Part shown: positions 6,228 through 26,300 of the stretch, piece by piece
Layout of the letters: every line of letters starts with the position of its first letter
How positions within the stretch are numbered: the stretch's first letter is position 1
Assembly: GCA_004431415.1 (NCBI GenBank)
Contig: QPMI01000237.1
Span: forward strand, 49,559-113,558
Origin: Cyanophora paradoxa CCMP329
Lineage: Eukaryota; Plantae; Glaucophyta
DNA: 64,000 nucleotides
Direction: 5' to 3'
The notes under the pieces: generated by a model
Told to the model about the DNA's origin: nothing
Seen by the model: the letters and a program-made list of their open reading frames with translations, nothing else
Database searches by the model: none
Made by a program: the position numbers and the translations under genes

Positions 6228-9116
6228 ATGGATTTGGTTCTCAGCCGTGTAGACTACCTGCAGGCGCGTGCACTCGCTTGCCATCGGAACCGCACTCGCT
6301 CTGCCTCCCGCTCTGACTACTGATGCGGCAGGTCTCGTCGACCTGCAGGCGGTCGATGCGGCTGCTGCGGGCAGAGAAGAAGCGTTCCCATCAGGTCGTG
6401 GTCGCGGATGACACGGGCTCCATCGTCTGCTTCGGCGCGAAGAAGGGCCAGCTGCAGACGGTGTTCAAGACGCAGCCCACCGGAAAAGAAGTGAACCGCC
6501 TGGAGCTTGGCGGCGCTCGCGGCGATAAGACGAAGATCTTTACATCGTCTGGAAGCACTATACGAGGGGTGACTAAGAAAGGAAAGGAATTCTTCAAGTT
6601 CCAAACGAATCTGACCGAGACGATCAACTCGCTGTACGTGGAGGATGTGAACATCTGGACAGCGGGGGAGTTCGTTTACAACGTATTCGTCGACTGCAAT
6701 GTGCGCCCGCGCGCATCCTGGCCGGGTGGCGGGGTGGATGGGGCAGGGGCGTGGGTAGGCGGGGAGGGCCCCTCCGACTCGCGCCACAGGACAAGAACTA
6801 CTACATGGCGGGCGACCGGATCAACGACATGATCGTGGATGTGGTGTCGGGGGACCCGTCGAACGTGGGCGGCTACGACGGCGTCTTGGGCTGCCAGGAC
6901 CGCTTCATCCGGGTCATCCAGGGCTCCAACCTCTTCTACGAGTGCGCCCTGGACGGCGCCTGCAATGCGCTCGCGCGGTACACGCCGCGGCGACGGGTCG
7001 GCCCCGACGGGGACGACGTCGACGAGGACACGCCGGACCCGGCGGCGAAGCAGCGGGAAGTGCTCTACGGGACGGACAACGGGCTCGTGGGGGTCGTGCA
7101 GATGGACGCCGTGGGCATCAAGAAAGGGTGGAAGATCGCGAACACGAAGCGGCTCGGGGCGGTGCAGTGCGTGGCGGCGTACGACCTGACGGAGGACGGG
7201 CGCAACGACGTTGTCGTCGGGCGCGACGACGGCTCCGTGGAAGTCTACTGCTTCGACGTCAGCGACGAGCCGCGCCTCGTCTTCTCGAAGAACGTCGCCG
7301 AGTCGGTGACGGCGCTGGACGTGGGGGTGGTGCAGAACCCGCCCTACCGCGAGATCGTCCTCTCCACCTACGGCGGCAAGGTCCTCTCCTTCACCGCCGC
7401 CCCCGAGCCCGAGCGGGCCCCCGAGCTCGACAAGCCCCTGCCCGACCCCAAGGAGGAGAAGAAGAAGGAGAAGGAGAAGAAGGCGGCGGGGGCCAAGGGC
7501 CCGGACCCGAAGGGGGACATGGCGAAGAGCATCCAGTCGCTGCGCGGGGACCTCGACAAGCTGCGGGGGCAGGTGGGGCAGGCCCGCGACAAGTACCTCA
7601 AGAGTACCCAGGACGTCGTCGCCGTCGCCCCCGCCTTCAAGGCCCGCCCGCCCGCCCGCCCGCCCGGCCCCGTGCCTCACGCCGCCGCGCAGGTCAACGA
7701 TAAGTTTGTCCTCAGCGGGGAGGACGCCAGCTACACGCTTACGATCGAGATCCAGGCGCGGCCGGGCGGCGGCGCGGGGGGTGGGGCGCGGGGCGGGGCG
7801 TGACGCGTGCCGCAGACGCCGATCGACGTGGTGGCGCTGCAGAGCGAGGCGGCGATCGACCTGCTGGACATGGACACGAGCGTCGCGATCGTCTCGCGGA
7901 CGCCGCCGGAGCCGGAGTCCGGGAGCCGCCTGCTGGCGACCTTCCGCTGCCAGGAGGCCGTCTCCCGCCTCGAGATCAAGCTCCGCTCCACCGAGGGCCA
8001 CCACGGGCCCCTCCAGGCCCGCGCCCCGCCCCGCTGCGCCGCCCCGCCCCGCCGCGCCGCGCCCCTCACCCGCCGCAGGTCTACGTAATGCCCCGCGTCA
8101 CCCCTAAGAGCTGCACCCTCCTCTCCTACTCCATCAAGCCCCTCTCCCTCCACCAGGTGCAGGGGCCGGGCGGGGGCGGCGGGGCGGGGCGAGCCGGCGG
8201 GGCGCAGCGGGTGGCGGAGCTGCCGGAGGACGCGCTGACGCGGCCGATGAGCGAGCTGCGGCTGACGGGGAGCTTCTCGCTGGCGGACGCGCACGCGTGG
8301 GTCGTGGGCGTCCTCCCCGAGGTCCCCGCCCGCTACCCCGCCGGCGACGAGCTCTCCTTCTGGTTCCGCAACGTCTTCCTCGGCCCGCCCGCGACCCGCC
8401 GGCGCCCCGCCCGCCCCGCCCGGTTCCTGACGGGCGGCGTAGGGACGCTGCTGACGTGCACGTACAAGAAGGGGGAGGCGTCGTTCCGGTCGGACTCGCT
8501 CTCGACGCTGGCGATCCTGAAGGAGTTCGTGTCGCGGGAGGCGACGGCGAAGAAGATCTCGGTGCGGCCGTCGTTCGACATCAAGGAGGAGAGCGTCCCG
8601 CACGTCCTCCGCCTCCTGCACCCGCGCGTCGAGTACCAGCGCGGCCTCGCCCTCAAGGTCCGCCTCATCGAGGCCCTCAAGGAGCTCTCCATGCACGTGC
8701 GCCCGCCCCGCCGGCCCCCGCCGCCCTGCCCCCGCGTCGCCCCGCGACTCCCCGCAGGAGGAGGACACGAGCTACATGACGGACGAGTACAAGGGCATCC
8801 TCGCCAACGCGGAGACCATCCAGCGCGACTTCGCGGTGCGCTGGGCCGGCCCTCGCTCTGTGCGGCCGGCTGGGGCGAGCTGGGCGGCAGAACCAGCCGC
8901 GGCGTCTCGAGTTCCTCAACTGCATCGTAGCCGACCTCTACATTGATCGCCTCAAGTTCAAGGCGCGGCACGCGCCGGCGCCCCATGCCTGCCCCCCGTG
9001 ACCGCACCCCGCAGGGCCTCGACGGACGCGCGCGCCTCCCTGCGCTGCAGAAGCTGCTCGAAAGCTACGACTCCATAGACCGCCTCACCGCCTTCTTCCT
9101 CGAGCCCATCGCGTAG
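6228..9116 (+). CDS. BBS7: Bardet-Biedl syndrome 7 protein (BBSome subunit), 10 introns
   Basis: N-terminus MDLVLSRVDYLQ/VSSTCRRSMRLL; TKKGKEFFKFQTNLTE, LGCQDRFIRV, VVGRDDGSVEVY, LLATFRCQ, IKPLSLHQ, FRSDSLSTLAILKEFVSREAT, DLYIDRLKFKG; TAG at 9114-9116. Confidence 0.95.
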
Positions 9117-10071
9117 AGCCAGCGCTAGCGCTAGCACCGCCGCGGCGCCGGAACCCCTCGCCCCGACCTGCCCCCCTTCGATTCGAAGCTTCTGGCCTTT
9201 CGTCCCCCCGCCTCTCGCTTCCCCTCCGGCTCCGTCACTGTTAGTTTCCGGCCCAGTCAATGCAGTCTTGGGGACTCCGGCATATGCATGGCGCGGCTGC
9301 TCGTGATCAGCGCCAGCGCTAGCGCTAACGCTAGTACTAGTATACTGCCAGCTACAGTGATGGGATGTCGACGTCGACCGATGCGCCGAATTCGAAAGCG
9401 GCCCGGGCCGGGTACCGGTACAGATCTAGATGCCCTGGAGCTCATCGTTACATGCGCACATAAGCGACATGTACGGCTTCAGCCTCAAGTCATTGAGGGG
9501 TACACCAACCGCAGCACTGGTTCTGCGAATTGATAACACAGCCTAGCCTGGCAGGCAGACTGCTATAGCCGCGCGTCCCCGTTGAGGCCGCGACTTCAAC
9601 GGGGCGCGGTGCGTGCGCGCGCACCGCGGCCCCAGTTAACGTTTTTCCTGCCCCGCCGCGTTACATTTCTCGCAGGAACATCACGCTTCGGAAGGCCTCG
9701 GGTGCGGACGACGCCGACGGGAAAACCCCTCCGCTGGAGGTCGCGGCCGTCGACGTCCCGGCACGAGCTCGAGCCCCGGCCTTTTTGAATATGCATGCTA
9801 TTGAAAACTGAAGAGTATTGGATCCGCACCACCTTTGTTTTCTGAGGCAATCGTTAGTCTACTTCAAGATCTCTAGGTTAGTGCCCAGCGAACCCAAAAT
9901 ATCCAGCTGCTCATATACTGGCTCGCCCCCTGAAAAAATGTTTCCGAAGCTATTGCTTTGCAACTGATTGCAAAACACTGTGCCCTAGATCAGGGGCTGG
10001 CACCGGTTTATACATAGCCGGGGGCGGGTGGCGAGTTCTTACATTTCAAATTATTTAAAAGTTGAACTCGA

Positions 10072-13000
10072 TTTTTTTTTTTGGTGAATTACCGGCCACA
10101 GTCTCTAGACACCAGCACTGCGGGGGCTGCCCAGGGGGCATAGAGACAAAATAGCAAAATAACTAAGACAAGAGCACGAAGAAAGATAAGACAAAGAGCC
10201 AAAATCGACAATAAAAAAGGAAAGACACAGAGCTCGAGACAGATCGATTGCGAGAAGAGACGATAAATCGAGCAGATCTAGGGACAGAGGATAACTGACA
10301 CGAAGAAGAGCCAGAGCTAGAGGATAACTGACACGAAGAAGAGCCAGAGCTAGAGATACCATCAATATCAGAAGGAATTACATCACTAAGAAGCGGGGGA
10401 CAAAATTGAGAAAGATAAATAACAGGAAGAAGACAAGTAAGAGGAACAACAAGACGACATGGAGGCGGAGGCGAAGCAGGACGATGCGAAAGGGCAGAGC
10501 TACGGCACGAGGTCGAGGAGGACACAGGAGGCGGAGCAGGCGGATCAAGAGCAGGCAAAAGAACAGTCAAAGGAATCACTAAAGCCGGCCGGGGTCGAGG
10601 CGGGCAATCGAACTGCAAACGACGGCGAACAACAGGTCGAGCACGAGGACTATAGCTAGTATTGAAACTAACTCTAGCATCAACACTACGATCAGAATCC
10701 GAACCAGACCGAACTAAACTAGAAGACGAAGAAGTACGCCGGCGCCGGCGGATACGATCGCGACCAGCGAAGCAGAAGACAAGGACAAAGGCGGTAGTCC
10801 GGTATCAAGAACAAAGGCCGGAGGGTCCGGCCCGGCAAACCGCCGGGGGAAGTAGAAGGAGCCGCAGGCTCGGCAAGCCGGCGACGGGTACGACCACGAG
10901 TCCGGAAGGAGATCGGGGAAGCCGGTCCCGGAGCTGAGGGCCCAGGAGCAGAGCCAGGAGAAGGTAAGCCCGGCGAGAAATCTGACCCGGAGCCGGAACC
11001 CAGCGAACGACGACGACGAAGAGGCCCCCGAGGAGCCACGACGGGGGAGCTACCGAGCAAAGTACTGACAGCCGGCGCCGAACACGGCGGCGGAGGTACC
11101 CCGCAGACAGTGGCAGGCGGAGAGTCCAGGGTCGATCGAGAGATCCGCCGACGGGAATGCGGCGGGGGCCGACGAGACGGAAGAGGCGAGGAGGGGCCGA
11201 GGAAGGGTCGGAGGCAGGGGAAGGGCCACGAGCAGGTGACGGGGATCGCTGCCGGCGCCGAAGAGAGGGCAGCAAAGCAGGAGAAAGGTCGGGTGGCGCC
11301 GGAGCAGATGACACGGAGGTCATGGCCATGGGCGGTGCAGAGAGAGACGAGCTCGAGGGCGCAAGGGCCCGACGAGGGCGCCGGCGGCGAATCTCACGAG
11401 CGCCAGGAAGCGGGATAGGACCCGCAGATGGGACCCGAGGCGCCGAAGGGGAGCAGGGAGCCGGAATGACGGGGAGATCGAAAAGAGGACAGTCTCGCCA
11501 ACACTCGGAAGCGGGGCAGAGGCCGAGGACCCGGAGCTCGAGGGGGGGAGGGAGGGCGGAGGAGGAGAGAGGAGGCGGCTATTCGAAGGGTATGGAGAAT
11601 CGAGAGCGGAGGCGAGGGAGGCCGAAGTGATGGCGAGCTCTGGAGGCGAGGGGGCCTGCAAGCGGATCCGGGAAAGTGGATGCAGACGCAAAGAGACCGG
11701 GGACGTAGAGGCGGGAGGGGCATGCAAAAAGATAGTGCCGCCCAGCGTCACAGTTGCAGAAGCGGGGGCAAGAAGGATGGGCTGAAGAGGGGGCTGAACC
11801 AGGAGGACGTCAGAAAGAGGGCCTCGCAGGGGCGGAAGTGGAGGAGCAAGGGGAAGAGGTAAGAAGGGGTATGGAGCTGCAAGATGACCAGGGACCTGCC
11901 GGGGAACAGGCAAGTGAAGAGGCCCCGTGACAGCAAGTTGTAAGGAGGGAGGAGGCAGAGGCGGGGCCAGAGGGCCAAGGAGCACAGGGATCGGGACCGC
12001 AGGGAATGGGGGAAAGGAGCGTCGAGAGGGGCAGCGAGAGCAGGAATAGGAATGGGCCCAAGGGTCACTACAGGGGCCAGAGCAGGAGGGGACGGCGCAG
12101 GAGGCGGGCGACCACCAGGGATCCCAACGGGACATTCCCACGAACGGCAAACTCCGCAGGATTCCGGAGGACAGAATCGATGTCACGCGAAGAGACGAGG
12201 TTGTCAGCACCGCCCGAAGAAGGAGCGCCGGACGAGTCAGAATCAGAGCTTGAACTAGAACGATGAGAACCGGTACCAGACTCTGAATCATGTGCGTCAT
12301 CATCCGAGGCAGCCTGATCATCAGCGTCAGCAGCAGCCAAGCGAGCGCGCCGCTCCTCCAACAAGGCCGAAGCCTGCGAAAGGGTGAACTCGAGGTACGA
12401 CATATTTCTGTCCCAGGCGGCAACAAGCGCGGCGCGGTTGTAAGAAGGCGCATCAATGTCAGCCTCCTCAAGATCGCACCGAGCGCGAGCAACCTGTTGG
12501 ATGGAAAATACGCCAGCAAGGATCGCTCCAAGTGAGCGAAGGCAGAAGGCGGGGTTAACTTTACTGCGCAAAATGGGCCCAGATAAATCCGGAACCGAGA
12601 GGATGTGGAAGAGAGAGAGCTCAGGCACTGCGACCTCTTCACGCTCATCCGGTGGAAGAGTAGAAGCCCAGAAATTCAGGCGCTCACGAATGAAATCCCA
12701 GAACGAACGAGAAAGCGGGCACTCAGAGAAAACGTGCGCGTGAGAGCGAGCAGATCCGTCATTACAAACCCGACAGAAACGACGGCGGGGCGACTGTTGC
12801 TCGCCCAAACGATACAATTTGAAATGCAAACGGTAAAGAGCATCGATCCAAAGCATCGGGAAACACTGAAGGACGACAAGATTAGGAAGACGGGACGGAG
12901 ACAAGGCGCCGGGAAACCCCCACTTAGCATCGGGCATCTGAGCGTGGCTAGACACATCGCGAAGCCGCTGGACCTCAAGGCAGTAGAAGCGACGAACAGA

Positions 13001-15177
13001 GGAGAGGCGGAGAGGGAGCATACGAGCGAAAGTGAACGCAAGATTATCAAGAGAAAGAAAGGCCGAAGGGCCTGCGCCAAGAACAAAAAGGCCAGGCAGG
13101 GTCCCGCGACGAAGAGAGAGGAAGACAGCGCTGAAGCAAACATGCAGCGGGAGCAAACGGGACAGAATTGAATTGGAGCTCGAGGATAGGCCCACAGGGT
13201 GGGAAGCCGCAGGGCGGCAAGGAACGCGCGGTATGTAGTCCAGCACCCGTGGAATTATCTGGTTATCGCGAACAGGGAAGGCAACAAAAGTACCACTTGG
13301 GCCTCGAAGGAGAGCAAACGAGGCGTCCGGTCCGGACCACCAGAGATGCTGAGGCGGCGATGCAGGGGCCTCGAGAACCTGGCGCCAAGTAGCCGGGAGC
13401 GCAGAACACAGACTAGGGAAAAAGGAGTGGAGGGCGGAGGAGGCAGCTGCTGGAGCCCGGAACCCCCGGGCAGCACAATCCCAGATATCGCAGACCCGCA
13501 GCAAGCCGGACCGTGCACAGCGACTCCAGTCGACCTCGTCGCCGGGAGTACTGAACAGAGGATTGAAGAAAAGAGGTTGGGATAACACTTCGGGAGAGTT
13601 ACGAGGTTGACACACGCCCTGGCGCTGAGCCCACTCGGAGAGAGTCCGCTTCCAAATAGGAGGCAAGTCAAGTCTGTCAAGTGGGAGGCGGAGCGAGACA
13701 AGGGCGGGGCCATAGGAAAAAGGTGCCAGCTGAGCGTCCAGTTTGCTCAAGAGGTACTCCTTCCAAGGAGCTGAACAAGAGGGGTCAGCGAGCAAGGCCA
13801 CCCACTTCATTTTCAGCGATAACGAAAAAGCTCGAATATCCGGGCAGTTGAGACCACCTTGACGCCACGGCAGAGGAGAAATATACTTCGAAAGCTGCCC
13901 GCTCACGCCAGCAAAAGCGCGAAGCTTCTCTTGCCATGTCGAATACTGAGCATCAGGGGGGTCAAGCAAATATAGAGCATAATGTAGGGACCCAATAAAT
14001 ACAGCCCAGGCAAGGAGAACGCCGGATCGCATCGGCATGCGATAAGTCTTCGCTTGCTGGACACGGATATCAAGAGCAGCGGTCTTTTTCCGCCAGAACC
14101 GAGACAGATCGGGCTCTAGTGGAAAGCCCAGGTATTTTCGAATTTTTTCAGCGGGAGGGAGATCCGTCACCTGAAGACGCCGCCAGGGGCAGTCCTCGAC
14201 GCTAGGCCAGGCATGTGCGGGGATATCGCGGAGTGGAAGAAGGCTAGATTTCTCGAGATTAATAAGAGCTCCAGAGAGCCGGCAGTATTTATCAAAGCAC
14301 TCTTTCCAGAAAGGCAATTCGGTAAAAGACGAGATTAAAGGAACCGTGTCGTCTGCAAACTGGAGCACCTTGCAAAGAGAGCTAGAGGACAAGCGGACAC
14401 CTCGTATACGAGCATCAGCATTAATCAAAAGGGCTAAAAGGTGTGTGCACAAATTATATAGATAGGGCGAAAGGGGGCCACCCTGACGTACACCGCATCG
14501 AATGGGGAAAGGGCGGAGGTCCAGCCGTTAATGTGAACAGAACCCTGCAGATCAGAGTAGAGCAGGCGGACCCACTTGATAAATTGGGACCCGAAACCGA
14601 ACTGTTCGAGCGACCAGAAAAGGAAGCTCCAGTTAACGCGGTCATAGGCTTTTGAAAAATCAAGAAATCCGAAGCACAGCTGTTCAAGTGCAGGATTACC
14701 GCCCTCGTAATGCATGAGAAGATAAACAAGCATAACCTGGTGCACTGCGGACCGACGATGAATAAAGCCAGACTGAAAGCGGGATACAAGACCAGACATG
14801 AGTGGCGTTAAGCGGTTGGAGAGGGCGCGCTCGACTGCACGCTCTTCGACATTAGAGAGAGAAATTGGGCGGCGATTTGCAATCAAAGTAGGGTCCGTTG
14901 CCGGTTTAGTAATAGGAGTAATGAGGACGTGCCGCAAAGACTCGGACGGCTGCCCAGACTCATACATAGCAGCGATGTAAGCACAGAAATCGGGGCCAAT
15001 CTCATCAAAAAAGTGAACGTAGAATTCAGCAGGGAGACCATCGATGCCAGGAGACTTGGCTCCGCCAGACATCTCCTTAAAAGCACGAAATAGTTCTCCA
15101 GACGATAAGTCAGAGTCAAGATCAGCAGACTCAGTAGGGAGCAGGCGGTGAGGGGAATAGAGAGAGGCAACGCCAGA
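10072..15177 (-). mobile_element. 5'-truncated non-LTR retrotransposon, L1/Tx1-like
   Basis: T11 at 10072-10082 (poly-A tail on the minus strand); RT motifs; absent from the second copy of the host element, which has ACATGTAC at this position. Confidence 0.92.
12068..15177 (-). CDS. LINE ORF2 (reverse transcriptase plus C-terminal CCHC/zf-RVT); no endonuclease; one frameshift near 14510
   Basis: KSPGIDGLPAEFY, RPISLSN, QSGF, LDFSKAYDRVNW, GVRQGGPLSP (shifted frame), FADD, INLEKS, KYLG, CRVC-x8-HVFSEC. Confidence 0.9.
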
Positions 15178-15379
15178 CCGCTCTCTGGGGACCGCGGCCG
15201 CAGCAGCGCGCCCACCGCGCGTGGCGGCTGGCAGAAGGCGCCGGCGCGCGCCGGCGCAGGCTTGCCGGCGCCCGGCCATACCAGATCCCGGAGCCGTGCA
15301 CTAGCATGCATATGCATGTGCACGCGCAGTCAGCGGGCTGCGGCGGGGCTGTGGCCGCGATATTGATGCACTGGCTATA

Positions 15380-15622
15380 CTGTAAACGTACTAATATCCG
15401 CCAGCACTTTAATTCGACAAAACCCGAAAATCCTGTCGAAAATTAGTCCGCCAGCGTCGACGTCTTGATTTCGACACCCTGCGACTTCGCCATAGAGAGG
15501 TCAGCCGCTGGTACCCTCTCTCCATACAAAGGCTTAATTCGCCAGCGTCAAATATTCGACAGCGCGAGGGTCTGGCGAATATAGTCGAAATTAAACGCTG
15601 GCGGAAACTCGTACGTTTACAG
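15380..15622. mobile_element. MITE with TA target duplication (Tc1/mariner-type), nested in element copy 1
   Basis: ta|CTGTAAACGTAC...GTACGTTTACAG|ta; imperfect TIR extends about 40 bp (CCGCCAGC, TTAAT, TCGAC). Confidence 0.8.
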
Positions 15623-15864
15623 TAGCTATCGCGTGGGCCTATAGCTAGGCCTGCATGCGCATCACTAGCTGGGGAGGTCGGGGTCCCTAGCTAATGGCCT
15701 GGCCGCAGGGATCCCCGTCAGCGCGTCGTTGCGACTGCGGGCCGAAAGATTGAAAGGGAGGGGGTACCGCGCTGCGAAAGGCGTGGGGGTAGAGGTATTT
15801 TCAGGGACGCCACGCGCCCCCGTGCCAATGGACCGGGTGGCGCCGGGGCTGGTTTCGGGGACGG

Positions 15865-17030
15865 CGGCGAGTCTCCAGGGGTAGGCGAGGGGGTGGGCAG
15901 GGGTACGGCTTCACGCTCTAGCCCCGCTCTCTCTCGGGGGCGGCGGCGAGTCTCCAGGGGTGGGGAAGGGACTAGGCGGGGGTACGATTCCGAGCTAGCG
16001 CCGCTCTCTCTCTCTCTCTGGGGGCGGTGGCGAGTTTCCAGGGTGGGGGAGGGGTGGGCGGGGGTGCGGTTTCGAGCTCTATAGCTAGCCCGCTCTCTCT
16101 CGGGGGACAGTGGCGAGTCTCCAGGGGGGGGGAGAGGGGCCGGGCTGGGCGGGGAGTACGGCTTCAAGCTCTAGCCCCGCTCTCTCTCGGGGGGCGGCGG
16201 CGAGTCTCCAGGGGGTGGCCATGGGGAAGGGACTAGGTGGGGGTACGACTCCGAGCTAGCGCCGCTCTCTCTCTCTCTCTCTCTGGGGGCGGTGGCGAGT
16301 CTCCAGGGGGTGGGGAAGGGACTAGGCGGGGGTACGATTCCGAGCTAGCGCCGCTCTCTCTCTCTCTCTGGGGCGGTGGCGAGTTTCCAGGGTGGGGGAG
16401 GGGGTGGGCGGGGGTGCGGTTTCGAGCTCTATAGCTAGCCCGCTCTCTCTCGGGGACAGTGGCGAGTCTCCAGGGGGGGGGGGAGAGGGGCCGGGCTGGG
16501 CGGGGGTACGGCTTCAAGCTCTAGCCCCGCTCTCTCTCGGGGGCGGCGGCGAGTCTCCAGGGGGTGGCCATGGGGAAAGGACTAGGTGGGGGTACGACTC
16601 CGAGCTAGCGCCGCTCTCTCTCTCTCTCTCTGGGGCGGTGGCGAGTCTCCAGGGGGTGGGGAAGGGACTAGGCGGGGGTACGATTCCGAGCTAGCGCCGC
16701 TCTCTCTCTCTCTCTCTCTGGGGGCGGTGGCGAATTTCCAGGGTGGGGGAGGGGGTGGGCGGGGGTGCGGTTTCGAGCTCTAGCCCGCTCTCTCTCGGGG
16801 GACAGTGGCGAGTCTCCAGGGGGGGGAGAGGGGCCGGGCTGGGCGGGGGTACGGCTTCACGCTCTAGCCCTCCTCTCTCTCAGGGGGCGGCGGCGAGTCT
16901 CCAGGGGGTAGGAGAGGGGGTGGGCGGGGGGTACGGCTTCAAGCTCTAGCCCGCTCTCTCTTGGGGGGCAGTGGCGAGTCTCCAGGGGGTGGGAAAGAGG
17001 TGGGCGAGGGGTACGGTTCCGTGTTCTAGC
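15865..17030. repeat. G-rich minisatellite array (~55-65 bp variant units with (CT)n tracts)
   Basis: Recurrent GGCGAGT[CT]TCCAGGG...GGGGTACG...CTAGC...CTCTCTC. Confidence 0.9.
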
Positions 17031-17164
17031 CTCGCTCTTTCTCAGGGGCGGTGTAGGGATGGGCACGTGCACGTGGGAGGACGGCCGAGGCTCGAGCACT
17101 ACTGCATGGGCGTGCCAAACCGGAAGGGGGCTGCAGCTGGTGAGGAGAAAGGCAACTCACGTAA

Positions 17165-17741
17165 CCCACCACCAAGCCCGCCCCCCCCCGCTGGAAACTC
17201 GCCGCTCACCCCTCAGAGGCCCGCTGCACAGGCGCGAGAAGCCAAGGGGGGCGGACGAGGAGGGAGGGCCGCGGTCCCGTACCCCACCACCAAGCCCGCC
17301 CCCCCCGCTGGAAACTCGCCGCTCAACCCTCAGGGGCCCGCTGCACAGGCGCGAGAAGCCGAAGGGGGCGGACGAGGAGGGAGGGCCGCGGTCCCGTACC
17401 CCACCACCAAGCCCGCCCCCCCCGCTGGAAACTCGCCGCTCACCCCTCAGGGGCCCGCTGCACAGGCGCGAGAAGCCGAAGGGGGCGGACGAGGAGGGAG
17501 GGCCGCGGTCCCGTACCCCACCACCAAGCCCGCCCGCCCCGCTGGAAACTCGCCGCTCACCCCTCAGGGGCCCGCTGCACAGGCGCGAGAAGCCGAAGGG
17601 GGCGGACGAGGAGGGAGGGCCGCGGTCCCGTACCCCACCACCAAGCCCGCCCCCCCCCGCTGGAAACTCGCCGCTCACCCCTCAGGGGCCCGCTGCGCAG
17701 GCGCGAGAAGCCGAAGGGGGCGGACGAGGAGGGAGGGCCGC
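17165..17741. repeat. ~119 bp tandem repeat, about 5 copies
   Basis: Unit CCACCACCAAGCCCGCC..GCTGGAAACTCGCCGCTCACCCCTCAGGGGCCCGCTGCACAGGCGCGAGAAGCCG.. Confidence 0.9.
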
Positions 17742-18143
17742 GGGCGGTCCTGTATACGTATACGTACCCCATGTCCAAGACCCGCCCCTCCCCCCCCCAC
17801 AGGAGAGGGGCGCGTGCTCTGCCCTGTCCTACCGCGAGGCCTAGGCAAGCGCATGCATGCTCGAGCTCGCCCGCAGCTTGGCAAGCGGTTAGCCTAGTAG
17901 CACTAGCGCTCATGATTTCGATCAGCCCTGATCAGGGGAAGGTTTGAAGGGCGTGCACATATGCATGTACACGTGACTCGACGTACGCGTGGGTCGCGAT
18001 TGAGGCTCGAACGAGGAGTTCAGTATGCCGCACTAAAAATTCGTATCATTTGCCTGGGCCCTACCGATGCTTTAGAAGGCCTTAGTGCGGCACCAAATAC
18101 TCGTTCCACCCTTTCTTCAAGGGGGTTGGGACCAGTATGGCAC

Positions 18144-21100
18144 TTTTTGAATATGCATGCTATTGAAAACTGAAGAGTATTGGATCCGCACCACCTTTGT
18201 TTTCTGAGGCAATCGTTAGTCTACTTCAAGATCTCTAGGTTAGTGCCCAGCGAACCCAAAATATCCAGCTGCTCATATACTGGCTCGCCCCCTGAAAAAA
18301 TGTTTCCGAAGCTATTGCTTTGCAACTGATTGCAAAACACTGTGCCCTAGATCAGGGGCTGGCACCGGTTTATACATAGCCGGGGGCGGGTGGCGAGTTC
18401 TTACATTTCAAATTATTTAAAAGTTGAACTCGAACATGTACCCGCTCTCTGGGGACCGCGGCCGCAGCAGCGCGCCCACCGCGCGTGGCGGCTGGCAGAA
18501 GGCGCCGGCGCGCGCCGGCGCAGGCTTGCCGGCGCCCGGCCATACCAGATCCCGGAGCCGTGCACTAGCATGCATATGCATGTGCACGCGCAGTCAGCGG
18601 GCTGCGGCGGGGCTGTGGCCGCGATATTGATGCACTGGCTATACTGTAAACGTACTAATATCCGCCAGCACTTTAATTCGACAAAACCCGAAAATCCTGT
18701 CGAAAATTAGTCCGCCAGCGTCGACGTCTTGATTTCGACACCCTGCGACTTCGCCATAGAGAGGTCAGCCGCTGGTACCCCTCTCTCCATACAAAGGCTT
18801 AATTCGCCAGCGTCAAATATTCGACAGCGCGAGGGTCTGGCGAATATAGTCGAAATTAAACGCTGGCGGAAACTCGTACGTTTACAGTAGCTATCGCGTG
18901 GGCCTATAGCTAGGCCTGCATGCGCATCACTAGCTGGGGAGGTCGGGGTCCCTAGCTAATGGCCTGGCCGCAGGGATCCCCGTCAGCGCGTCGTTGCGAC
19001 TGCGGGCCGAAAGATTGAAAGGGAGGGGGTACCGCGCTGCGAAAGGCGTGGGGGTAGAGGTATTTTCAGGGACGCCACGCGCCCCCGTGCCAATGGACCG
19101 GGTGGCGCCGGGGCTGGTTTCGGGGACGGCGGCGAGTCTCCAGGGGGTAGGCGAGGGGGTGGGCAGGGGTACGGCTTCACGCTCTAGCCCCGCTCTCTCT
19201 CGGGGGGCGGCGGCGAGTCTCCAGGGGGTGGGGAAGGGACTAGGCGGGGGTACGATTCCGAGCTAGCGCCGCTCTCTCTCTCTCTCTGGGGGCGGTGGCG
19301 AGTTTCCAGGGTGGGGGAGGGGGTGGGCGGGGGTGCGGTTTCGAGCTCTATAGCTAGCCCGCTCTCTCTCGGGGGACAGTGGCGAGTCTCCAGGGGGGGG
19401 GAGAGGGGCCGGGCTGGGCGGGGAGTACGGCTTCAAGCTCTAGCCCCGCTCTCTCTCGGGGGCGGCGGCGAGTCTCCAGGGGTGGCCATGGGGAAGGGAC
19501 TAGGTGGGGGTACGACTCCGAGCTAGCGCCGCTCTCTCTCTCTCTCTCTCTGGGGCGGTGGCGAGTCTCCAGGGGTGGGGAAGGGACTAGGCGGGGGTAC
19601 GATTCCGAGCTAGCGCCGCTCTCTCTCTCTCTCTGGGGGCGGTGGCGAGTTTCCAGGGTGGGGGAGGGGGTGGGCGGGGTGCGGTTTCGAGCTCTATAGC
19701 TAGCCCGCTCTCTCTCGGGGGACAGTGGCGAGTCTCCAGGGGGGGGGGGGGGAGAGGGGCCGGGCTGGGCGGGGGTACGGCTTCAAGCTCTAGCCCCGCT
19801 CTCTCTCGGGGGGCGGCGGCGAGTCTCCAGGGGGTGGCCATGGGGAAAGGACTAGGTGGGGGTACGACTCCGAGCTAGCGCCGCTCTCTCTCTCTCTCTC
19901 TGGGGGCGGTGGCGAGTCTCCAGGGGGTGGGGAAGGGACTAGGCGGGGGTACGATTCCGAGCTAGCGCCGCTCTCTCTCTCTCTCTCTCTGGGGGCGGTG
20001 GCGAATTTCCAGGGTGGGGGAGGGGGTGGGCGGGGGTGCGGTTTCGAGCTCTAGCCCGCTCTCTCTCGGGGGACAGTGGCGAGTCTCCAGGGGGGGAGAG
20101 GGGCCGGGCTGGGCGGGGGTACGGCTTCACGCTCTAGCCCTCCTCTCTCTCAGGGGGCGGCGGCGAGTCTCCAGGGGGTAGGAGAGGGGTGGGCGGGGGG
20201 TACGGCTTCAAGCTCTAGCCCGCTCTCTCTTGGGGGGCAGTGGCGAGTCTCCAGGGGTGGGAAAGAGGTGGGCGAGGGGTACGGTTCCGTGTTCTAGCCT
20301 CGCTCTTTCTCAGGGGCGGTGTAGGGATGGGCACGTGCACGTGGGAGGACGGCCGAGGCTCGAGCACTACTGCATGGGCGTGCCAAACCGGAAGGGGGCT
20401 GCAGCTGGTGAGGAGAAAGGCAACTCACGTAACCCACCACCAAGCCCGCCCCCCCCGCTGGAAACTCGCCGCTCACCCCTCAGAGGCCCGCTGCACAGGC
20501 GCGAGAAGCCAAGGGGGGCGGACGAGGAGGGAGGGCCGCGGTCCCGTACCCCACCACCAAGCCCGCCCCCCCGCTGGAAACTCGCCGCTCAACCCTCAGG
20601 GGCCCGCTGCACAGGCGCGAGAAGCCGAAGGGGCGGACGAGGAGGGAGGGCCGCGGTCCCGTACCCCACCACCAAGCCCGCCCCCCCGCTGGAAACTCGC
20701 CGCTCACCCCTCAGGGGCCCGCTGCACAGGCGCGAGAAGCCGAAGGGGCGGACGAGGAGGAGGGCCGCGGTCCCGTACCCCACCACCAAGCCCGCCCGCC
20801 CCGCTGGAAACTCGCCGCTCACCCCTCAGGGCCCGCTGCACAGGCGCGAGAAGCCGAAGGGGCGGACGAGGAGGGAGGGCCGCGGTCCCGTACCCCACCA
20901 CCAAGCCCGCCCCCCCCGCTGGAAACTCGCCGCTCACCCTCAGGGGCCCGCTGCGCAGGCGCGAGAAGCCGAAGGGGGCGGACGAGGAGGGAGGGCCGCG
21001 GGCGGTCCTGTATACGTATACGTACCCCATGTCCAAGACCCGCCCCTCCCCCCCCCACAGGAGAGGGGCGCGTGCTCTGCCCTGTCCTACCGCGAGGCCT

Positions 21101-21401
21101 AGGCAAGCGCATGCATGCTCGAGCTCGCCCGCAGCTTGGCAAGCGGTTAGCCTAGTAGCACTAGCGCTCATGATTTCGATCAGCCCTGATCAGGGGAAGG
21201 TTTGAAGGGCGTGCACATATGCATGTACACGTGACTCGACGTACGCGTGGGTCGCGATTGAGGCTCGAACGAGGAGTTCAGTATGCCGCACTAAAAATTC
21301 GTATCATTTGCCTGGGCCCTACCGATGCTTTAGAAGGCCTTAGTGCGGCACCAAATACTCGTTCCACCCTTTCTTCAAGGGGGTTGGGACCAGTATGGCA
21401 C
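18144..21401. mobile_element. Copy 2 (uninterrupted) of the ~3.26 kb element, head-to-tail with copy 1
   Basis: Junction ...CAGTATGGCAC|TTTTTGAATATG at 18143/18144; same internal arrays and MITE. Confidence 0.85.
18644..18887. mobile_element. MITE (TA-flanked), copy inside element copy 2
   Basis: Same TIRs as 15380-15622. Confidence 0.8.
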
Positions 21402-21749
21402 CCGGACCCCGCACCCGATCCGGACCCTGAGGCGCCCGGCTCCTCGTCGGCGGCCCCGCCACCGGCGAAGAGGCAGCGCCTGCAGCTTTAGCTGTAGCTA
21501 GCTAGCTGCGCTAGCTAGCTCTCGATCTCCCTCCGGTTGGTTGACCACCAACCTCTTCCGCCCACAGTCTTGTGCGGCGCCGGTTAGCGCGTGGACCGGA
21601 TAGAGGGGCTCCGTTCCCCAGGACACTCCCTTTGTTCACAGCGTCGAAGTCGTGCCGTATGCACGTAGTGTGTGCTGTACCCGTAGACGCGTGTCACAGG
21701 CCGAGTTTGTTCAATTGCAGGCAGGCAGCGTACTTCCGTGGTTGCAAGC

Positions 21750-23209
21750 ATGGATGCCGTGGCGCGCCGAAATTGGTTAGAGGAGCGCAGAAAGACGCTT
21801 GAAGCTGAGATCCAGGCTCGAAAGCAAGAAATATATACGCAGGTGCAGACCGAGTCGCTTCCGCGAGCTGGCATCGCTCTCGCTTCGGAACCAGACAGTC
21901 CGCGGGATGATTCGCCGCGCGAGGCACCGAGGAGGGCGGAGCGACCCGTCGCTGCTGACCTCGGCCGCCGGCCAGTCGCCTTTCCGACGCTCGAGGACCT
22001 CGCCGCCGAACCGTTGATACAGGTGCCGGGTGGATAGCTCACGCTCCCAGTGAAGAAGCCGAGCGAACGTTTGTTTTGCGCAGTCCCTGCGTGTGTCGTT
22101 TGGCTCAGACCGCGTCGAAATTGGCGCCACGGGGCCAGGCAGTCCGCGCTCAGATCTCCCGTCCGCTCATGCGCCAAGGTCCGCGCGTTCTGGCCCGCAC
22201 TGGCCCGTGAGACGCCTAATCCGATCGCCTCAGCCCCGTTCGGCCGGCGTCGGGCCCTAAGACCGCGGAGCGGGGCCGTGCGCTCCTGACGCTCGCTTCG
22301 GTGATGCAAGCGGAGACCGACGAACAGGAGAGGACGGCCCTAGCTCGGAGACATCCCGCCGCGCTGGCAATGCCGCACTCGTCGTCGGAGGACATGGTCA
22401 ACGTAGTGCCTGTCGGGGGGCCGCCCGCCGAGAACGGAACGCCTCGGGTAACCGCCTTCGTTCCGGCCGTCAAGACCTCCCCAGCGTGGAACTCGCCGCG
22501 CGGCGAGCTGCTCGCCCAAGATCCCGCCTCGCATGCAACGCGCAGTCCGCCTCGGGGGGCCGAGCTGCGAGGCAACGAGCTGCGCGAGTCGACGCAGAGC
22601 GCGCCGAGCAGCGCTGTACGCCCAGCGCCGGTCCGCGGCGCGGCTGCTGCGTGGGCTTCGCCACCGCGCTCTCGAGCGCCGGTCGGTCCGCTGCGGTCGT
22701 CAGCCCCAGCAAGCTCGAGCTCGGTCCCCCAGGCGGCCCGGAGCGCGAACGTTGCGCAGCCGGCGCCCATCTCGCAGCCGAAGCGGCGGCGCGCCGTGAA
22801 GCCCATCTACTCCTGGGAGCGGCCCCAGGGGACCCCGGCGGGACCCCGCAGCCCGCCCGAAGCCGCGCGAAGTCCGCCGGTGAGTTCTTTCCCGGCTGGT
22901 GACCCCGCCACCATTACTGATTGAGACTGGGGCGTGCAGAGGACGGCCCCGCCCGCCGTGCCACAGCGTGCAGCGCGAACGGAGCAGGCGCCTGTGCATG
23001 CGGCGCCGTCAGAGCGGCGGGCACCTGAGCTCTTCGAGTTCCGCATCCGGCTGACGGGCGAGGAGTACGCGGAGCTCCTCCGCCGCCAGCGCAGCTACCG
23101 CGCGCGCCTCGGGCAGCCCCACGCGACCCCGGCGGCCGCCCCCCCCTCCACCGCCCACCCCTTATCCGCCCCCAAACTTCTAGCACGACCCGTCCCCGCC
23201 TTTCGATAA
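21750..23209 (+). CDS. Uncharacterised spliced protein (N-terminal coiled coil, Pro/Ser-rich middle)
   Basis: Three protein-like exons: MDAVARRNWLEERRKTLEAEIQARKQEIY.., QAETDEQERTALARRHP.., ELFEFRIRLTGEEYAELLRRQ..; plausible GT-AG junctions. Confidence 0.55.
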
Positions 23210-23374: not shown

Positions 23375-26300
23375 TCAGGAGACGATGGGGCGGACCTGGC
23401 GCGGCAGCAATCAGGCTCGAACGAGGGGGGCGGGGCGAGCGGAGGAGCGACTGCACGGACATTCGGCGGGACCAAGAGGTCCCGTGGCACTTTCTGGAAT
23501 CGGATGGCCTCCGGGTTGAACTCGGGGGTCTCGCAGAACTGGAGGAAGAGGTTGGCGATGCGGCGGCGCAGGCCCTCGAGGGACTTCTCGGAGCGCCCGC
23601 GGTTGAGCATGTCGGCCTCGCGGTCGATGAGGTCCACGAGGTCCCGCGTCAGGTTGCAGTCGAACTCCTTCACCGTCCACTTCACGTGCAGCAGCACGTC
23701 CAGCCGCTCGTCTATCGTCAGCAGCGGCAGCCGGAGCCCGTTGTAGAGCTCCATGAGCTCCCGCGCCCGCGTCGTGAAGGGCGTGTGGACCTCCGTCGTG
23801 GCGCCGTCGGACATGGCCCACTTCTTCGGGGCGGACATGGTGGAGAGCATCGAGTTGATGCGCGTGTCGCGGTTCTCCGACGCGGCGCTGATCTTCAGCC
23901 GGTCGATCGTCTGCAGCAGCTTCGTCTCCTTGTGCAGCAGCTGAGCCAGCGCCGCCAGCCGCTCCGTCTCCGGCAGGCCCGACTCGTTGATCTTCGTCGT
24001 TTCCGCCAGCCGCCACGCTGCCGGCCCGGGGCCCCCTCAGCGCAGAGCCGGAGTGCGCACGCAAGGGGAAGGAGAGGGGGCGAGAAGGGGGGGTGGGATG
24101 GGGCCGGCGGACCCTCCAGCTCGCTGTAGAGGATCTCGAAGTCGGCGGCGGAGCGCGGGTGCATGCGGCGCTCGATCTCCCTGCGCCTCTTATCCTCCTC
24201 CACCGCGCGCTGCTGCTCCTGCTGCTCCTCCATCTCCTGCACCGCCGCCTCCTGCTCCTCGCGCATCCGCTTCGCCAGCTTCCGCGCCCGCCACCCCCGC
24301 AGGTAGCACTGCAGCTTGATCGTCTGCGCGCCGCAGATTAGTCCTCGCCGGCGCGAGTGGCACAGAGCCCGGCGAGCCTTCTCGAGCCGCAGCTGCTCCA
24401 GCTGTTGCGAGTCGAAGTAGGGGCGCGAGTAGAGGACGACATCACGCTCTTCGCCCACGACGTGGCCCGGCGGCAGCTGCTTAGTCGGCTGCGTCTGCGC
24501 CCCGCGGCCGTCGACGGCCGGCCGGCGCGGGGCGCGGGAGCGGGGGGCGGACCATCTGCGTGCCACACTCGCGAGTGGTGACGGTGGAGAGGGTGCGCGT
24601 CTCGAATGTCTGCGTGTCCCGGTGGAAGCGCACGATCGCCGCCCGCTGCGCCCCGCCCCGTCGCGCCCCGCGGGTCGCCAGCCGCGCGGGCCGCGGCGGA
24701 CCTTCTTCTGCTCCTCGGTGGGCGGCGGGGGGTCGGTCTGCGTCTGCGCGTGGAGGTACTCGGCGCCGGAGCGGCGGTCGCGGTAGCCGCCGATGAAGGG
24801 CTTCTTCTTCTTCTCGGCGACGACCTTGACGAGCATGCGCTTGGGGGCCATCCCCGGCCCGAAGTCGACGGTGACCGAGAGCGAGTCGGGGAGGGGCCGC
24901 GCCGGCTTCGCCTCCGCGTACTCGATCTGCAGCTCGATGCTGTACTCGCCGCCCGGCGCGAAGCCGTAGCTCGCCAGCTGCCGTGGGTTCGCCATCATCT
25001 CCCCTGCGCGCCCGAGTCCCTCAGCGGCCGCGCTGCGGCGCCCCGGCGCGGGCGGATGACCGTTGAAGAGGAGCTTGATGTTGTTGAAGTTGATCTTCAG
25101 CTGCTTCTCGACAGTCATCTTTGCCCCTGCCACCGTGTCCCGCACGCTCAGGCCGGTAGTGTGGGCGTAGCCCTCCGGCATGATCACAAACGTCACGCTC
25201 GCCTCGTACGGGTTCACCTGCTGCGAGCCACCGTCAGCTGGAGCCGGCCGCGCGCTCGCAAGTACCGTCCAGACCTCGGGGGGCGGGGCTGGCGGCTCCT
25301 CGGGGGGCTCCTCCCCTGCCTCCTGCGATCGCTCCATCGACATCGAGCGCCGGACCTGGTGCCCTCGTACCACCTTCTGGATCTTCAGCGCCGCCGCCTC
25401 CTCGGTCATCTCCGGCCCCTCCCCGCCCGACGCTGCATCCGCCGTTGTTGCCGCTGCTGCTGCTGCTTCGGCCTGGCCCGCCGCGTCCGTCTGGCCCGCC
25501 GCATCGCTTCGCTCCATCGACATCGAGCGCCGGACCTGGTGGCCCCGCACCACCTTCTGGATCTTCAACGCCGCCTCATCCTCGGTGATTGCCGGGTCGG
25601 CCTCATCTCGGGGCTGCGGAAGCGGCTCCAGCTCCGCGATTTGAGCAGCCGGAGGCGCCGTCTCCGGCACACTCGCCGCTTCCGTGTCCCCCTCCGGCTC
25701 ACCGCGCTCCGTCGACATCGAGCGCCGGACCTGGTGGCCCCGCACCACCTTCTGGATCTTCAGCGCCGCCTCATCCTCGGTGATGCCGGATGCGGCGGCG
25801 GAAGCTGCGGAAGGCTCGGGGGCCAGGGGAGGTTCGTGCGCCGGCTGTTGGGGCTCGGCTCCTGCTGCCGGCTGCGCGGCCGGCGCGAGCTCCTCGTCCA
25901 TTCGCTGCATCGAGAGCGTCCTCCGAACCGCATGGCCCTTCACCACTCCTTTCGAGGGAGTCCCCGAGGGCACCGGCGAGCCGGCAGGCGACGCCTCTGC
26001 ATGCGGGCCCTCGACCTCGGGCCCGACCGCTCCTGATGACGCCGCCCCTGCGCCGTCTGCTGCCGAAACCTCCGGCGCCGCTGATGCACCATTTGCCTCT
26101 CCCAGAGCGACTGGCTGCTGCCCATCCTCTCCACGCTCCATCGACATCGAGCGCCGGACCTGGTGGCCCCGCACCACCTTCTGGATCTTCAGCGCCGCCT
26201 CATCCTCGGTGATGCCGCCCGGCTGGTCCGCTCCAGAATCCGCCGCAGCTGCTTCTTGCGCGGGCGCGCTCTCTCCGGCAACTGCTGGAGCGTCGGCCCC

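What the first reader, a model, noticed from the sequence alone, without database searches (positions are those of the whole stretch)
9782..21401. Tandem dimer of a non-coding ~3.26 kb element inserted with no TSD: possible rolling-circle or circular-intermediate transposon family
Seen: two head-to-tail copies with identical termini (TTTTTGAATATG...CAGTATGGCA), separated and flanked by a single shared C. There is no terminal inverted repeat and no TSD, and excision restores the flanking frame exactly. It has an imperfect asymmetric subterminal inverted repeat (GAGTATTGGATCCGCAC near the left end versus GTGCGGCACCAAATACTC near the right), a local inverted repeat, a small terminal hairpin and central tandem arrays. 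Established: Helentron-associated non-autonomous elements such as DINE-1 share these features and form tandem copies, but insert in T-runs. This one sits in a C-run. Inference: an unclassified HUH- or tyrosine-recombinase-mobilised family.
Basis: partly seen in the sequence, partly recalled or inferred. Interest (0 to 1): 0.8.

Follow-up and report, generated by a model that had tools for sequence, protein, structure and literature searches.

The report
Tandem dimer of non-coding transposon
Two identical, exactly abutting copies of a 3.26-kb protein-less DNA element lie between two genes of the alga Cyanophora paradoxa; its ends look most like those of rolling-circle (Helitron-type) transposons, which are known to form such tandems, so it is probably an unclassified member of a known kind, but no second locus could be examined.

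Summary
The tandem dimer is in the sequence. It reads C | copy 1 (9782-18142) | C | copy 2 (18144-21400) | C. The two copies show 0 substitutions over 3.25 kb and differ only by 29 homopolymer indels, which run in both directions. Copy 1 also carries a nested 5.1-kb, 5'-truncated non-LTR retroelement (10072-15177, minus strand).

The host is Cyanophora paradoxa, shown by a BBS7 match to EukProt. The site is intergenic: BBS7 stops at 9116 and the next gene starts near 21751. "Frame restored" is therefore weak evidence. Three other signs point to a precise insertion:
- An in-phase 6-nt periodic tract runs across the flanks.
- GC content breaks sharply at both borders.
- The subterminal inverted repeats sit symmetrically.

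The 3' end has a 12-bp-stem hairpin 10 nt from the terminus, and a subTIR 37-58 nt from it. Tandem arrays fill the centre and there is no clear TSD. This fits a Helitron2/HINE-like element. However, the target is C|C, the 5' subTIR lies 28 nt inside the end, and the ends are not TC...CTRR.

My best reading is a non-autonomous rolling-circle element pasted as a two-unit product (about 0.4). Rivals are a retroelement dimer, tyrosine-recombinase circle integration, a microhomology duplication and an assembly artefact.

No other copy could be reached. Earlier scan notes report Helitron2-type arrays elsewhere in this genome, but not this element.

The parts
9740..9781 (+). Left flank: GC-rich intergenic tract with 6-nt periodicity, ending in the hexamer CCGGCC. 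The last base (C, 9781) is the shared C.
9782..10071 (+). Copy 1, left 290 nt (element positions 1-290), with the T5 start and the left subterminal inverted repeat.
   Evidence: 100% identical to 18144-18433
10072..15177 (-). Nested 5'-truncated non-LTR retroelement. It has an 11-nt A tail (seen as a T run at 10072-10082), reverse transcriptase at its 5' end, and an 8-bp target deletion relative to copy 2.
   Evidence: RVT_1, E 4.5e-14; weak zf-RVT
15178..18142 (+). Copy 1, right 2965 nt.
   Evidence: 0 substitutions against copy 2; indels only in homopolymers
18143..18143 (+). Single C between the copies. It forms the end-to-start ('circle-type') junction.
18144..21400 (+). Copy 2, uninterrupted, 3257 nt, with no credible coding capacity.
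   Evidence: no Pfam-like ORFs; protein searches blank
18172..18191 (+). Left subterminal inverted repeat, 29-48 nt from the 5' end.
18642..18889 (.). Internal 248-bp fold-back unit with 41-nt inverted arms, flanked by GCTA/GCTA (or TA/TA). It is probably a nested MITE-like insertion and is present in both copies.
19122..20321 (+). G-rich tandem array, ~87-bp unit x14, with a 352-bp higher order.
20428..21001 (+). Tandem array of 115-bp units x5 (117 bp in copy 1), containing an inverted piece of the 87-bp unit.
21284..21350 (+). Long stem (10-bp perfect stem) whose 3' arm overlaps the right subterminal inverted repeat.
21344..21365 (+). Right subterminal inverted repeat, 37-58 nt from the 3' end.
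21361..21390 (+). Terminal hairpin (12-bp stem with one bulge), ending 10 nt before the terminus.
21401..21450 (+). Right flank: the shared C (21401), then the hexamer tract CCGGAC CCCGCA CCCGAT CCGGAC, in phase with the left flank.

Best explanation
This is a protein-less (non-autonomous) mobile element of Cyanophora paradoxa. It is most likely moved in trans by a rolling-circle (HUH, Helitron2/Helentron-type) transposase.

Shown: a 3257/3258-nt unit is present twice, end to start. It lies in the ~1-kb spacer between BBS7 and the next gene and interrupts a continuous 6-nt periodic tract. The 3' end carries a subterminal inverted repeat, then a hairpin, then 10 nt to the terminus. Across the junction, the two subterminal repeats can pair and enclose the hairpin and the joined ends.

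Inferred: the enzyme nicks at the 5' end and displaces the strand. It normally stops at the hairpin-marked 3' end. Here it read past that end, on a circular or tandem template, and went round once more. A two-unit product was then pasted between two Cs without target duplication. A LINE-type retroelement later landed in copy 1.
For: - The junction is exact and the copies are identical: 0 substitutions in 3.25 kb and the same repeat numbers.
- Three signs mark the borders as true insertion ends. GC goes 0.75->0.35 at the left border and 0.53->0.83 at the right. The flanks form one in-phase hexamer tract (lag-6 autocorrelation 0.56; a flanking-hexamer match of at least 5/6 has p~0.01). The subterminal repeats sit symmetrically, at 29-48 and 37-58 nt from the ends.
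- The 3' hairpin lies 10 nt from the end and is in the top 0.25% of GC-matched windows. The last 120 nt fold with z -3.15 and the junction with z -3.2.
- These distances match published values. A canonical Helitron has a palindrome ~11 bp from the 3' end. HINE/DINE-1 elements have the 3' subTIR 38-60 nt and the palindrome 8-35 nt from the 3' end, central tandem repeats and no TSD (PMC4067079).
- Helitron2 end sequences vary. Joined-end circles and tandem copies are reported for them (PMC5148889).
- Unchecked notes from this scan report Helitron/Helentron RepHel genes and array-forming non-coding Helitron2-type elements in this genome.
Against: - Only one locus was seen. No autonomous partner and no second copy were found, so mobility as a family is not shown.
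- The ends are TT...GGCA(C), not TC...CTRR.
- The target is C|C in a GC-rich tract, not A|T or a T run.
- The left subTIR lies 28 nt inside the end rather than 2-4 nt.
- The inverted repeat is short and imperfect.
- The flanking hexamers (5/6 match) could be an imperfect TSD.
- Three protein-database searches with the element's ORFs and two metagenome scans with its ends found nothing.
Confidence: 0.4

Rival explanations
1. A composite non-autonomous retroelement on the minus strand (SVA-like: unique ends plus VNTR-type arrays), mobilised by a LINE. The dimer would arise when the reverse transcriptase jumped from the 5' end of one RNA copy to the 3' end of a second.
For: - Read on the minus strand, each unit is G + TGCCATAC...TTCAAAAA: an A5 3' end, plus one extra G at each 5' end, as expected from copying the cap (the cap-G and template-jump behaviour are from my own knowledge of L1/R2).
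- The flanking hexamers match 5/6, like a TSD.
- A very recent LINE insertion, in the same orientation, lies inside copy 1.
Against: - Both A runs are exactly 5 nt, which points to templated DNA ends rather than a poly(A) tail.
- The flanking repeat is imperfect although the copies show no substitution.
- There is no similarity between the element's tail and the nested LINE's tail.
- The structured end (hairpin plus subTIR) would then lie at the 5' end and have no role.
Confidence: 0.15
2. A plain microhomology-mediated tandem duplication (replication template switch) of a resident single copy. Only the first insertion, if there was one, would have been a transposition.
For: - The left flank ends GGCC and the unit ends GGCAC. 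They share a C, or an imperfect GGC-C, exactly where a template switch would need it.
- Identical copies fit a very recent duplication.
- The hairpins near the 3' end could stall replication (inference).
Against: Both duplication breakpoints would have to fall by chance on the element's true borders. Those borders are marked independently by the GC breaks, the in-phase flank tract and the symmetric subterminal repeats.
Confidence: 0.15
3. An element that moves through a double-stranded circle and a tyrosine recombinase (Crypton-like), integrated as a dimeric circle or by two successive integrations.
For: - No TIR and no clean TSD.
- An exact end-to-start junction, with a 1-nt overlap shared by junction and target.
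Against: - There is no positive marker. No recombinase was seen, and there are no split direct repeats or ITR/ICR structures of DIRS type.
- A 1-nt crossover region is very short.
- The hairpin-plus-subTIR 3' end has no role in this model.
Confidence: 0.08
4. Assembly artefact: the second unit is not in the genome.
For: - The copies differ only by homopolymer noise, so the local consensus is poor.
- The telomere tract of the same contig is about 6% noisy.
- Unchecked scan notes mention contigs in this assembly built from single error-prone reads.
Against: - One copy carries a 5.1-kb retroelement and the other does not, so the two are distinct molecules or places.
- The duplicated block ends exactly at biologically marked borders. 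False duplications are not expected to do this (inference).
- 3.3-kb units are well within long-read length.
Confidence: 0.08

Closest known systems
Helentron-associated non-autonomous elements (HINE / DINE-1; Helitron2 group)
   Same: - Protein-less, with central tandem repeats and no TIR.
- 3' subTIR 37-58 nt from the 3' end (published 38-60) and a palindrome within 10-40 nt of it (published 8-35).
- No target duplication.
- Tandem copies are known for the group (PMC4067079, PMC5148889).
   Different: - The target is C|C in GC-rich DNA, not a T run; Ts occur only at the 5' end.
- The 5' subTIR starts 29 nt from the end rather than 2-4 nt.
- The unit is 3.26 kb, mostly two long GC-rich arrays.
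- No autonomous partner is known.
Canonical Helitrons (Helitron1)
   Same: - Hairpin about 10-11 nt from the 3' terminus.
- No TIR or TSD.
- Circular joined-end intermediates and tandem arrays are known.
   Different: - The ends are not TC...CTRR.
- Insertion is not between A and T.
- Subterminal inverted repeats are present.
Replitrons (Y1 Rep transposons of algae and plants; PMC10288648)
   Same: - Copy-and-paste elements with non-autonomous derivatives.
- Right-end palindrome.
- Most families show no TSD.
   Different: The defining short direct terminal repeats are not supported here: only TATG..CA is shared, which is not above chance. Replitrons are not reported from glaucophytes in that paper.
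SVA-type composite retroelements / LINE-driven template-jump chimeras
   Same: - Non-coding, kb-sized, with a VNTR-like core.
- A run at one end and an extra 5' G per unit when read on the minus strand.
   Different: - The A run is fixed at 5 nt.
- There is no clean TSD.
- The tail is not shared with the LINE on site.

Membership tests
Helitron (canonical) | 5'-TC and 3'-CTRR termini | tested here: not met
   The unit starts TTTTTG and ends ATGGCA(C). The reverse strand starts TGCC and ends CAAAAA.
Helitron (canonical) | Insertion between A and T, no TSD | tested here: not met
   The site is CCGGCC|CCGGAC, i.e. C|C. There is no perfect TSD longer than 2 nt.
Helitron (canonical) | 16-20-nt palindrome about 11 bp from the 3' end | tested here: met
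   Hairpin at 21361-21390, 10 nt from the end, top 0.25% of GC-matched windows.
Helitron / Helentron | Ends shared with a RepHel-encoding autonomous element | not testable with these tools
   There is no RepHel in the window.
HINE / DINE-1 (Helitron2) | 12-15-bp subTIRs: the 5' one 2-4 nt from the end, the 3' one 38-60 nt from the end | tested here: inconclusive
   The 3' repeat lies 37-58 nt from the end (met). The 5' repeat lies 29-48 nt from the end (not met). The repeat is imperfect, with p 0.001-0.03.
HINE / DINE-1 (Helitron2) | Short palindrome 8-35 nt from the 3' end; central tandem repeats | tested here: met
HINE / DINE-1 (Helitron2) | T-rich target, with Ts flanking both ends | tested here: not met
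   The flanks are GC-rich (0.75 and 0.83). A T5 run occurs only at the 5' end and belongs to the repeated unit.
Any transposon family | Several dispersed copies with the same ends, plus empty sites | not testable with these tools
   There is a single locus in the window. Two metagenome scans and three protein searches were blank.
Replitron | Short direct repeats at the two termini | tested here: not met
   The best direct match between the ends is 4-7 nt and does not exceed shuffles.
DIRS-type tyrosine-recombinase retroelements | Split direct repeats, or inverted terminal repeats plus an internal complementary region | tested here: not met
   No terminal direct or inverted repeats and no internal copy of the joined ends.
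Penelope-like elements | Hammerhead ribozyme motif in the repeated ends (tandem arrangement is typical) | tested here: not met
   Rfam at E<=1 gave no ribozyme in 9000-22500. Only the tandem arrangement is met.
LINE-dependent non-autonomous retroelement | A-rich tail, variable TSD, 3' tail shared with a LINE | tested here: inconclusive
   An identical A5 in both units, a 5/6 hexamer flank match, and no tail similarity to the nested LINE.

The most novel reading that the evidence does not exclude
The unit belongs to a so far undescribed class of circle-forming, protein-less elements of glaucophytes. It would insert without any A/T requirement, next to a GGC(N)C motif that mimics its own 3' end. 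The junction cruciform (paired subterminal repeats enclosing a hairpin and the joined ends) would act as the origin or cleavage site for a Rep or recombinase that is not a Helitron RepHel.
Probability: 0.12. Interest if true: 0.7.

Novelty: new member of a known kind. Interest (0 to 1): 0.35.

Why it matters
If the rolling-circle reading holds, this locus is a clean snapshot of terminator read-through. It shows a full two-unit product with an exact joined-end junction, in a lineage (glaucophytes) whose transposons I found no detailed account of in the papers I could search. The GC-rich C|C target would widen the known target range of Helitron2-type elements. It also shows that the genome has very recent mobile-DNA activity: the copies are identical and a fresh LINE sits inside one of them. 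With only one locus in hand, the practical value is mainly as a lead for a genome-wide search.

Tried and rejected
1. Coding capacity. All ORFs in the unit are low-complexity read-through of GC-rich arrays. Three protein-database searches found nothing: the right end, the array ORF and the left unique ORF.
2. RNA genes. There was no Rfam family at E<=1 apart from a 20-bit chance hit, so no hammerhead ribozyme, and no tRNA.
3. Other copies. None was found in the window, none in JGI metagenome contigs with either end, and none by sequence look-up in the scan's notes.
5. Insertion into the BBS7 coding region. Rejected: the annotated protein (EukProt tig00001003_g6283.t1) ends at 9116, and its cleanly aligned exon hits are identical to the window.
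6. Long degenerate TIRs. Only the ~20-nt subterminal repeat and a palindrome about 200 nt from each end line up.
7. Replitron-type direct terminal repeats. Not above chance.
8. LINE/SINE tail sharing with the nested retroelement. None.
9. A transposase in the subtelomeric low-GC part of the window. Pfam found only a Brix domain fragment.
Full report
WHAT IS THERE

Repeat finding and BLAST of the unit against the window, plus direct reading of the four borders, give this layout:
- C (9781)
- copy 1, 9782-18142
- C (18143)
- copy 2, 18144-21400
- C (21401)

Copy 2 is an uninterrupted 3257-nt unit that starts TTTTTGAATATG and ends CAGTATGGCA. Copy 1 is the same unit, split after its 290th base by 5106 nt of foreign DNA (10072-15177).

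That insert begins with an 11-nt T run on the plus strand. On the minus strand it carries an ORF with a reverse-transcriptase match (RVT_1, E 4.5e-14). A weak continuation of the RT and a weak zf-RVT match follow in the next ORF. It replaces 8 nt (ACATGTAC) that copy 2 still has. It is therefore a 5'-truncated non-LTR retroelement that landed in copy 1 after the two copies existed.

With the insert removed, the copies show no substitution and 29 indels of 1-3 nt, all in G or C runs. Copy 1 is the shorter one at 11 sites and copy 2 at 18. I read these as consensus noise of a long-read assembly. The copies cannot be told apart from identical, and their internal arrays have the same numbers of units.

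ORGANISM AND SETTING

The ORF at 7800-8930 carries BBS7 domains. It matches bovine BBS7 in the PDB. Its best relative in the representative library is a 759-aa protein recorded as EukProt EP00741 Cyanophora paradoxa, tig00001003_g6283.t1. The cleanly aligned exon hits of that protein are 100% identical to the window, so the window comes from that 'tig' assembly.

The protein ends ...LTAFFLEPIA, which places the BBS7 stop at 9114-9116. A plus-strand ORF beginning with ATG at about 21751 opens the next gene. The dimer therefore lies in an intergenic spacer that would be about 1 kb without it, not in a coding exon.

The window ends in about 6 kb of TTAGGG repeats from about 57.8 kb on. The locus is thus about 36 kb from a telomere.

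IS IT AN INSERTION WITH THESE EXACT BORDERS?

It is weak: the joined frame has no ATG, no upstream exon is available, and two of the three frames stay open across the joint in this GC-rich DNA.

Three other observations do support precise borders:
1. GC content falls from 0.75 to 0.35 exactly at 9781|9782 and rises from 0.53 to 0.83 at 21400|21401.
2. The two flanks form one 6-nt periodic tract in a single phase...CCGGCA CGAGCT CGAGCC CCGGCC | CCGGAC CCCGCA CCCGAT CCGGAC. Its lag-6 autocorrelation is 0.56 against about 0.3. A flanking-hexamer match of at least 5/6 occurs at about 1% of random site pairs in this window.
3. A ~20-nt inverted repeat lies at nearly the same distance from each border: 29-48 nt from the left and 37-58 nt from the right. 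No shuffle of 1000 reaches its score for 60-nt ends, and 14 of 1000 do for 100-nt ends.

The same hexamer pair could instead be an imperfect 6-bp target duplication. For an event young enough to leave 6 kb without a substitution, a mismatch within 12 nt is unlikely. I therefore take it as native periodic sequence, but 'no TSD' is not fully clean.

ANATOMY OF THE UNIT

- There are no terminal inverted or direct repeats.
- The left ~975 nt are unique sequence. They include a 248-bp fold-back with 41-nt arms flanked by GCTA/GCTA, probably a nested MITE-like insertion present in both copies.
- A G-rich ~87-bp array follows (about 14 units), then a 115/117-bp array (5 units) holding an inverted piece of the 87-bp unit.
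- The last 120 nt are strongly structured (z -3.15). A 10-bp perfect stem spans 21284-21350, and its 3' arm overlaps the right subterminal repeat. A 12-bp-stem hairpin at 21361-21390 ends 10 nt before the terminus.
- That hairpin is in the top 0.25% of 32-nt windows of similar GC in this window.
- Across the copy 1/copy 2 junction, the two subterminal repeats can pair and enclose the hairpin and the joined ends (z -3.2).
- The first 120 nt on their own are unstructured.
- No RNA family, ribozyme or tRNA was found.
- No ORF looks like protein.

COMPARISON WITH KNOWN KINDS

Canonical Helitrons have a 16-20-nt palindrome about 11 bp from the 3' end, TC...CTRR ends, and insert between A and T without a TSD. 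HINE/DINE-1 elements of the Helentron group have the following (all from PMC4067079):
- 12-15-bp subTIRs, 2-4 nt from the 5' end and 38-60 nt from the 3' end
- a palindrome 8-35 nt from the 3' end
- central repeats
- T-rich targets
- no TSD

Fungal Helitron2 elements show that terminal sequences vary. They also show joined-end circles, and tandem copies are reported in several organisms (PMC5148889).

The present unit meets the 3'-end rules of both groups, the central repeats and the lack of TIRs. It fails on the terminal dinucleotides, on the target (C|C in GC-rich DNA) and on the position of the 5' subTIR.

Replitrons (PMC10288648) are defined by short direct terminal repeats, which are not supported here. 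DIRS-type repeats and the hammerhead motif of Penelope-like elements are absent.

MOST LIKELY MECHANISM

I favour, at about 0.4, a non-autonomous rolling-circle element moved in trans.

Shown:
- exact end-to-start joining of two identical full units
- a structured 3' end of Helitron type
- precise interruption of a continuous flank tract

Inferred:
- The transposase began at the 5' end and failed to stop at the hairpin-marked 3' end of a circular or tandem template.
- It copied a second unit and transferred the two-unit strand between two Cs.
- The left flank ends GGCC and the unit ends GGCAC. The enzyme may recognise a similar short motif at target and terminus, as other HUH transposases do. 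This is inference only.

Unchecked notes of this scan report RepHel genes and array-forming non-coding Helitron2-type elements elsewhere in this genome. That raises the prior, but I could not compare any ends.

RIVALS

(a) Retroelement dimer on the minus strand. Read that way, each unit is an extra G, then TGCCATAC...TTCAAAAA. This is what a capped RNA copied by a LINE enzyme with a template jump would leave, and a fresh LINE is on site. However, both A runs are exactly 5 nt, the flank repeat is imperfect, and the tail shares nothing with the nested LINE.

(b) Microhomology-mediated tandem duplication of a resident single copy. This fits the shared C / GGC-C, but it needs both breakpoints to fall on independently marked borders.

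(c) Tyrosine-recombinase circle integration. It has no positive marker.

(d) Assembly artefact. The consensus is noisy. However, the copies differ by a 5.1-kb insertion and the duplicated block ends at biologically marked borders. Only reads can settle it.

LIMITS

- Metagenome scans with both ends were blank.
- Protein searches with three ORFs of the unit were blank.
- The scan's own sequence look-ups were blank.
- Copy number, empty sites and the autonomous partner therefore remain unknown.

VERDICT

The dimer is a real feature of the assembly and almost certainly mobile DNA. It is best filed provisionally as a new, atypical member of the Helitron2/HINE-like non-autonomous elements, not as a new class. 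Interest is moderate (0.35).

Noticed in passing
window 57790-64000: About 6 kb of TTAGGG telomere repeats close the window, with about 6% irregular units. The contig end is therefore a chromosome end, and its consensus is noisy there.
   Followed up: partly
window 10072-15177 (-): A very recent 5'-truncated non-LTR retroelement with an 11-nt A tail and an 8-bp target deletion. After the RT there are more than 1200 codons of ORF with no Pfam match, and a strongly pyrimidine-rich sense strand near the 3' end (AT skew 0.53 and GC skew 0.27 on the plus strand at 10-12 kb).
   Followed up: partly
window 18642-18889 and 15378-15624: A 248-bp fold-back with 41-nt inverted arms, flanked by GCTA/GCTA (or TA/TA). 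It carries four copies of a CGCCAGC motif in both orientations. It looks like a MITE nested in the unit before the duplication.
   Followed up: partly
window 8690-9116: The last BBS7 introns use GTGCGC donors, and one uses a GC donor (AAG|GCGCGG). This agrees with the scan note on frequent GC-AG introns in this gene.
   Followed up: no
window 9575-9612: A perfect 9-bp stem (CCCCGTTGA / TCAACGGGG), extended by a CGCG/CGCG outer stem across a T:G mismatch, lies in the BBS7 3' region about 170 nt upstream of the insertion site. Its function is unknown.
   Followed up: no
window 52928-54230 vs 55693-57009, and 54463-54824 vs 57226-57588: A subtelomeric segmental duplication at 91-98% identity, next to the telomere. 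It overlaps the region another note calls a nuclease gene pair.
   Followed up: no
window 23895-27053 (-): A 1052-codon ORF with at least 7 IQ calmodulin-binding motifs. It contains internal ~220-bp tandem duplications at 98-99% identity (26113-26873).
   Followed up: no
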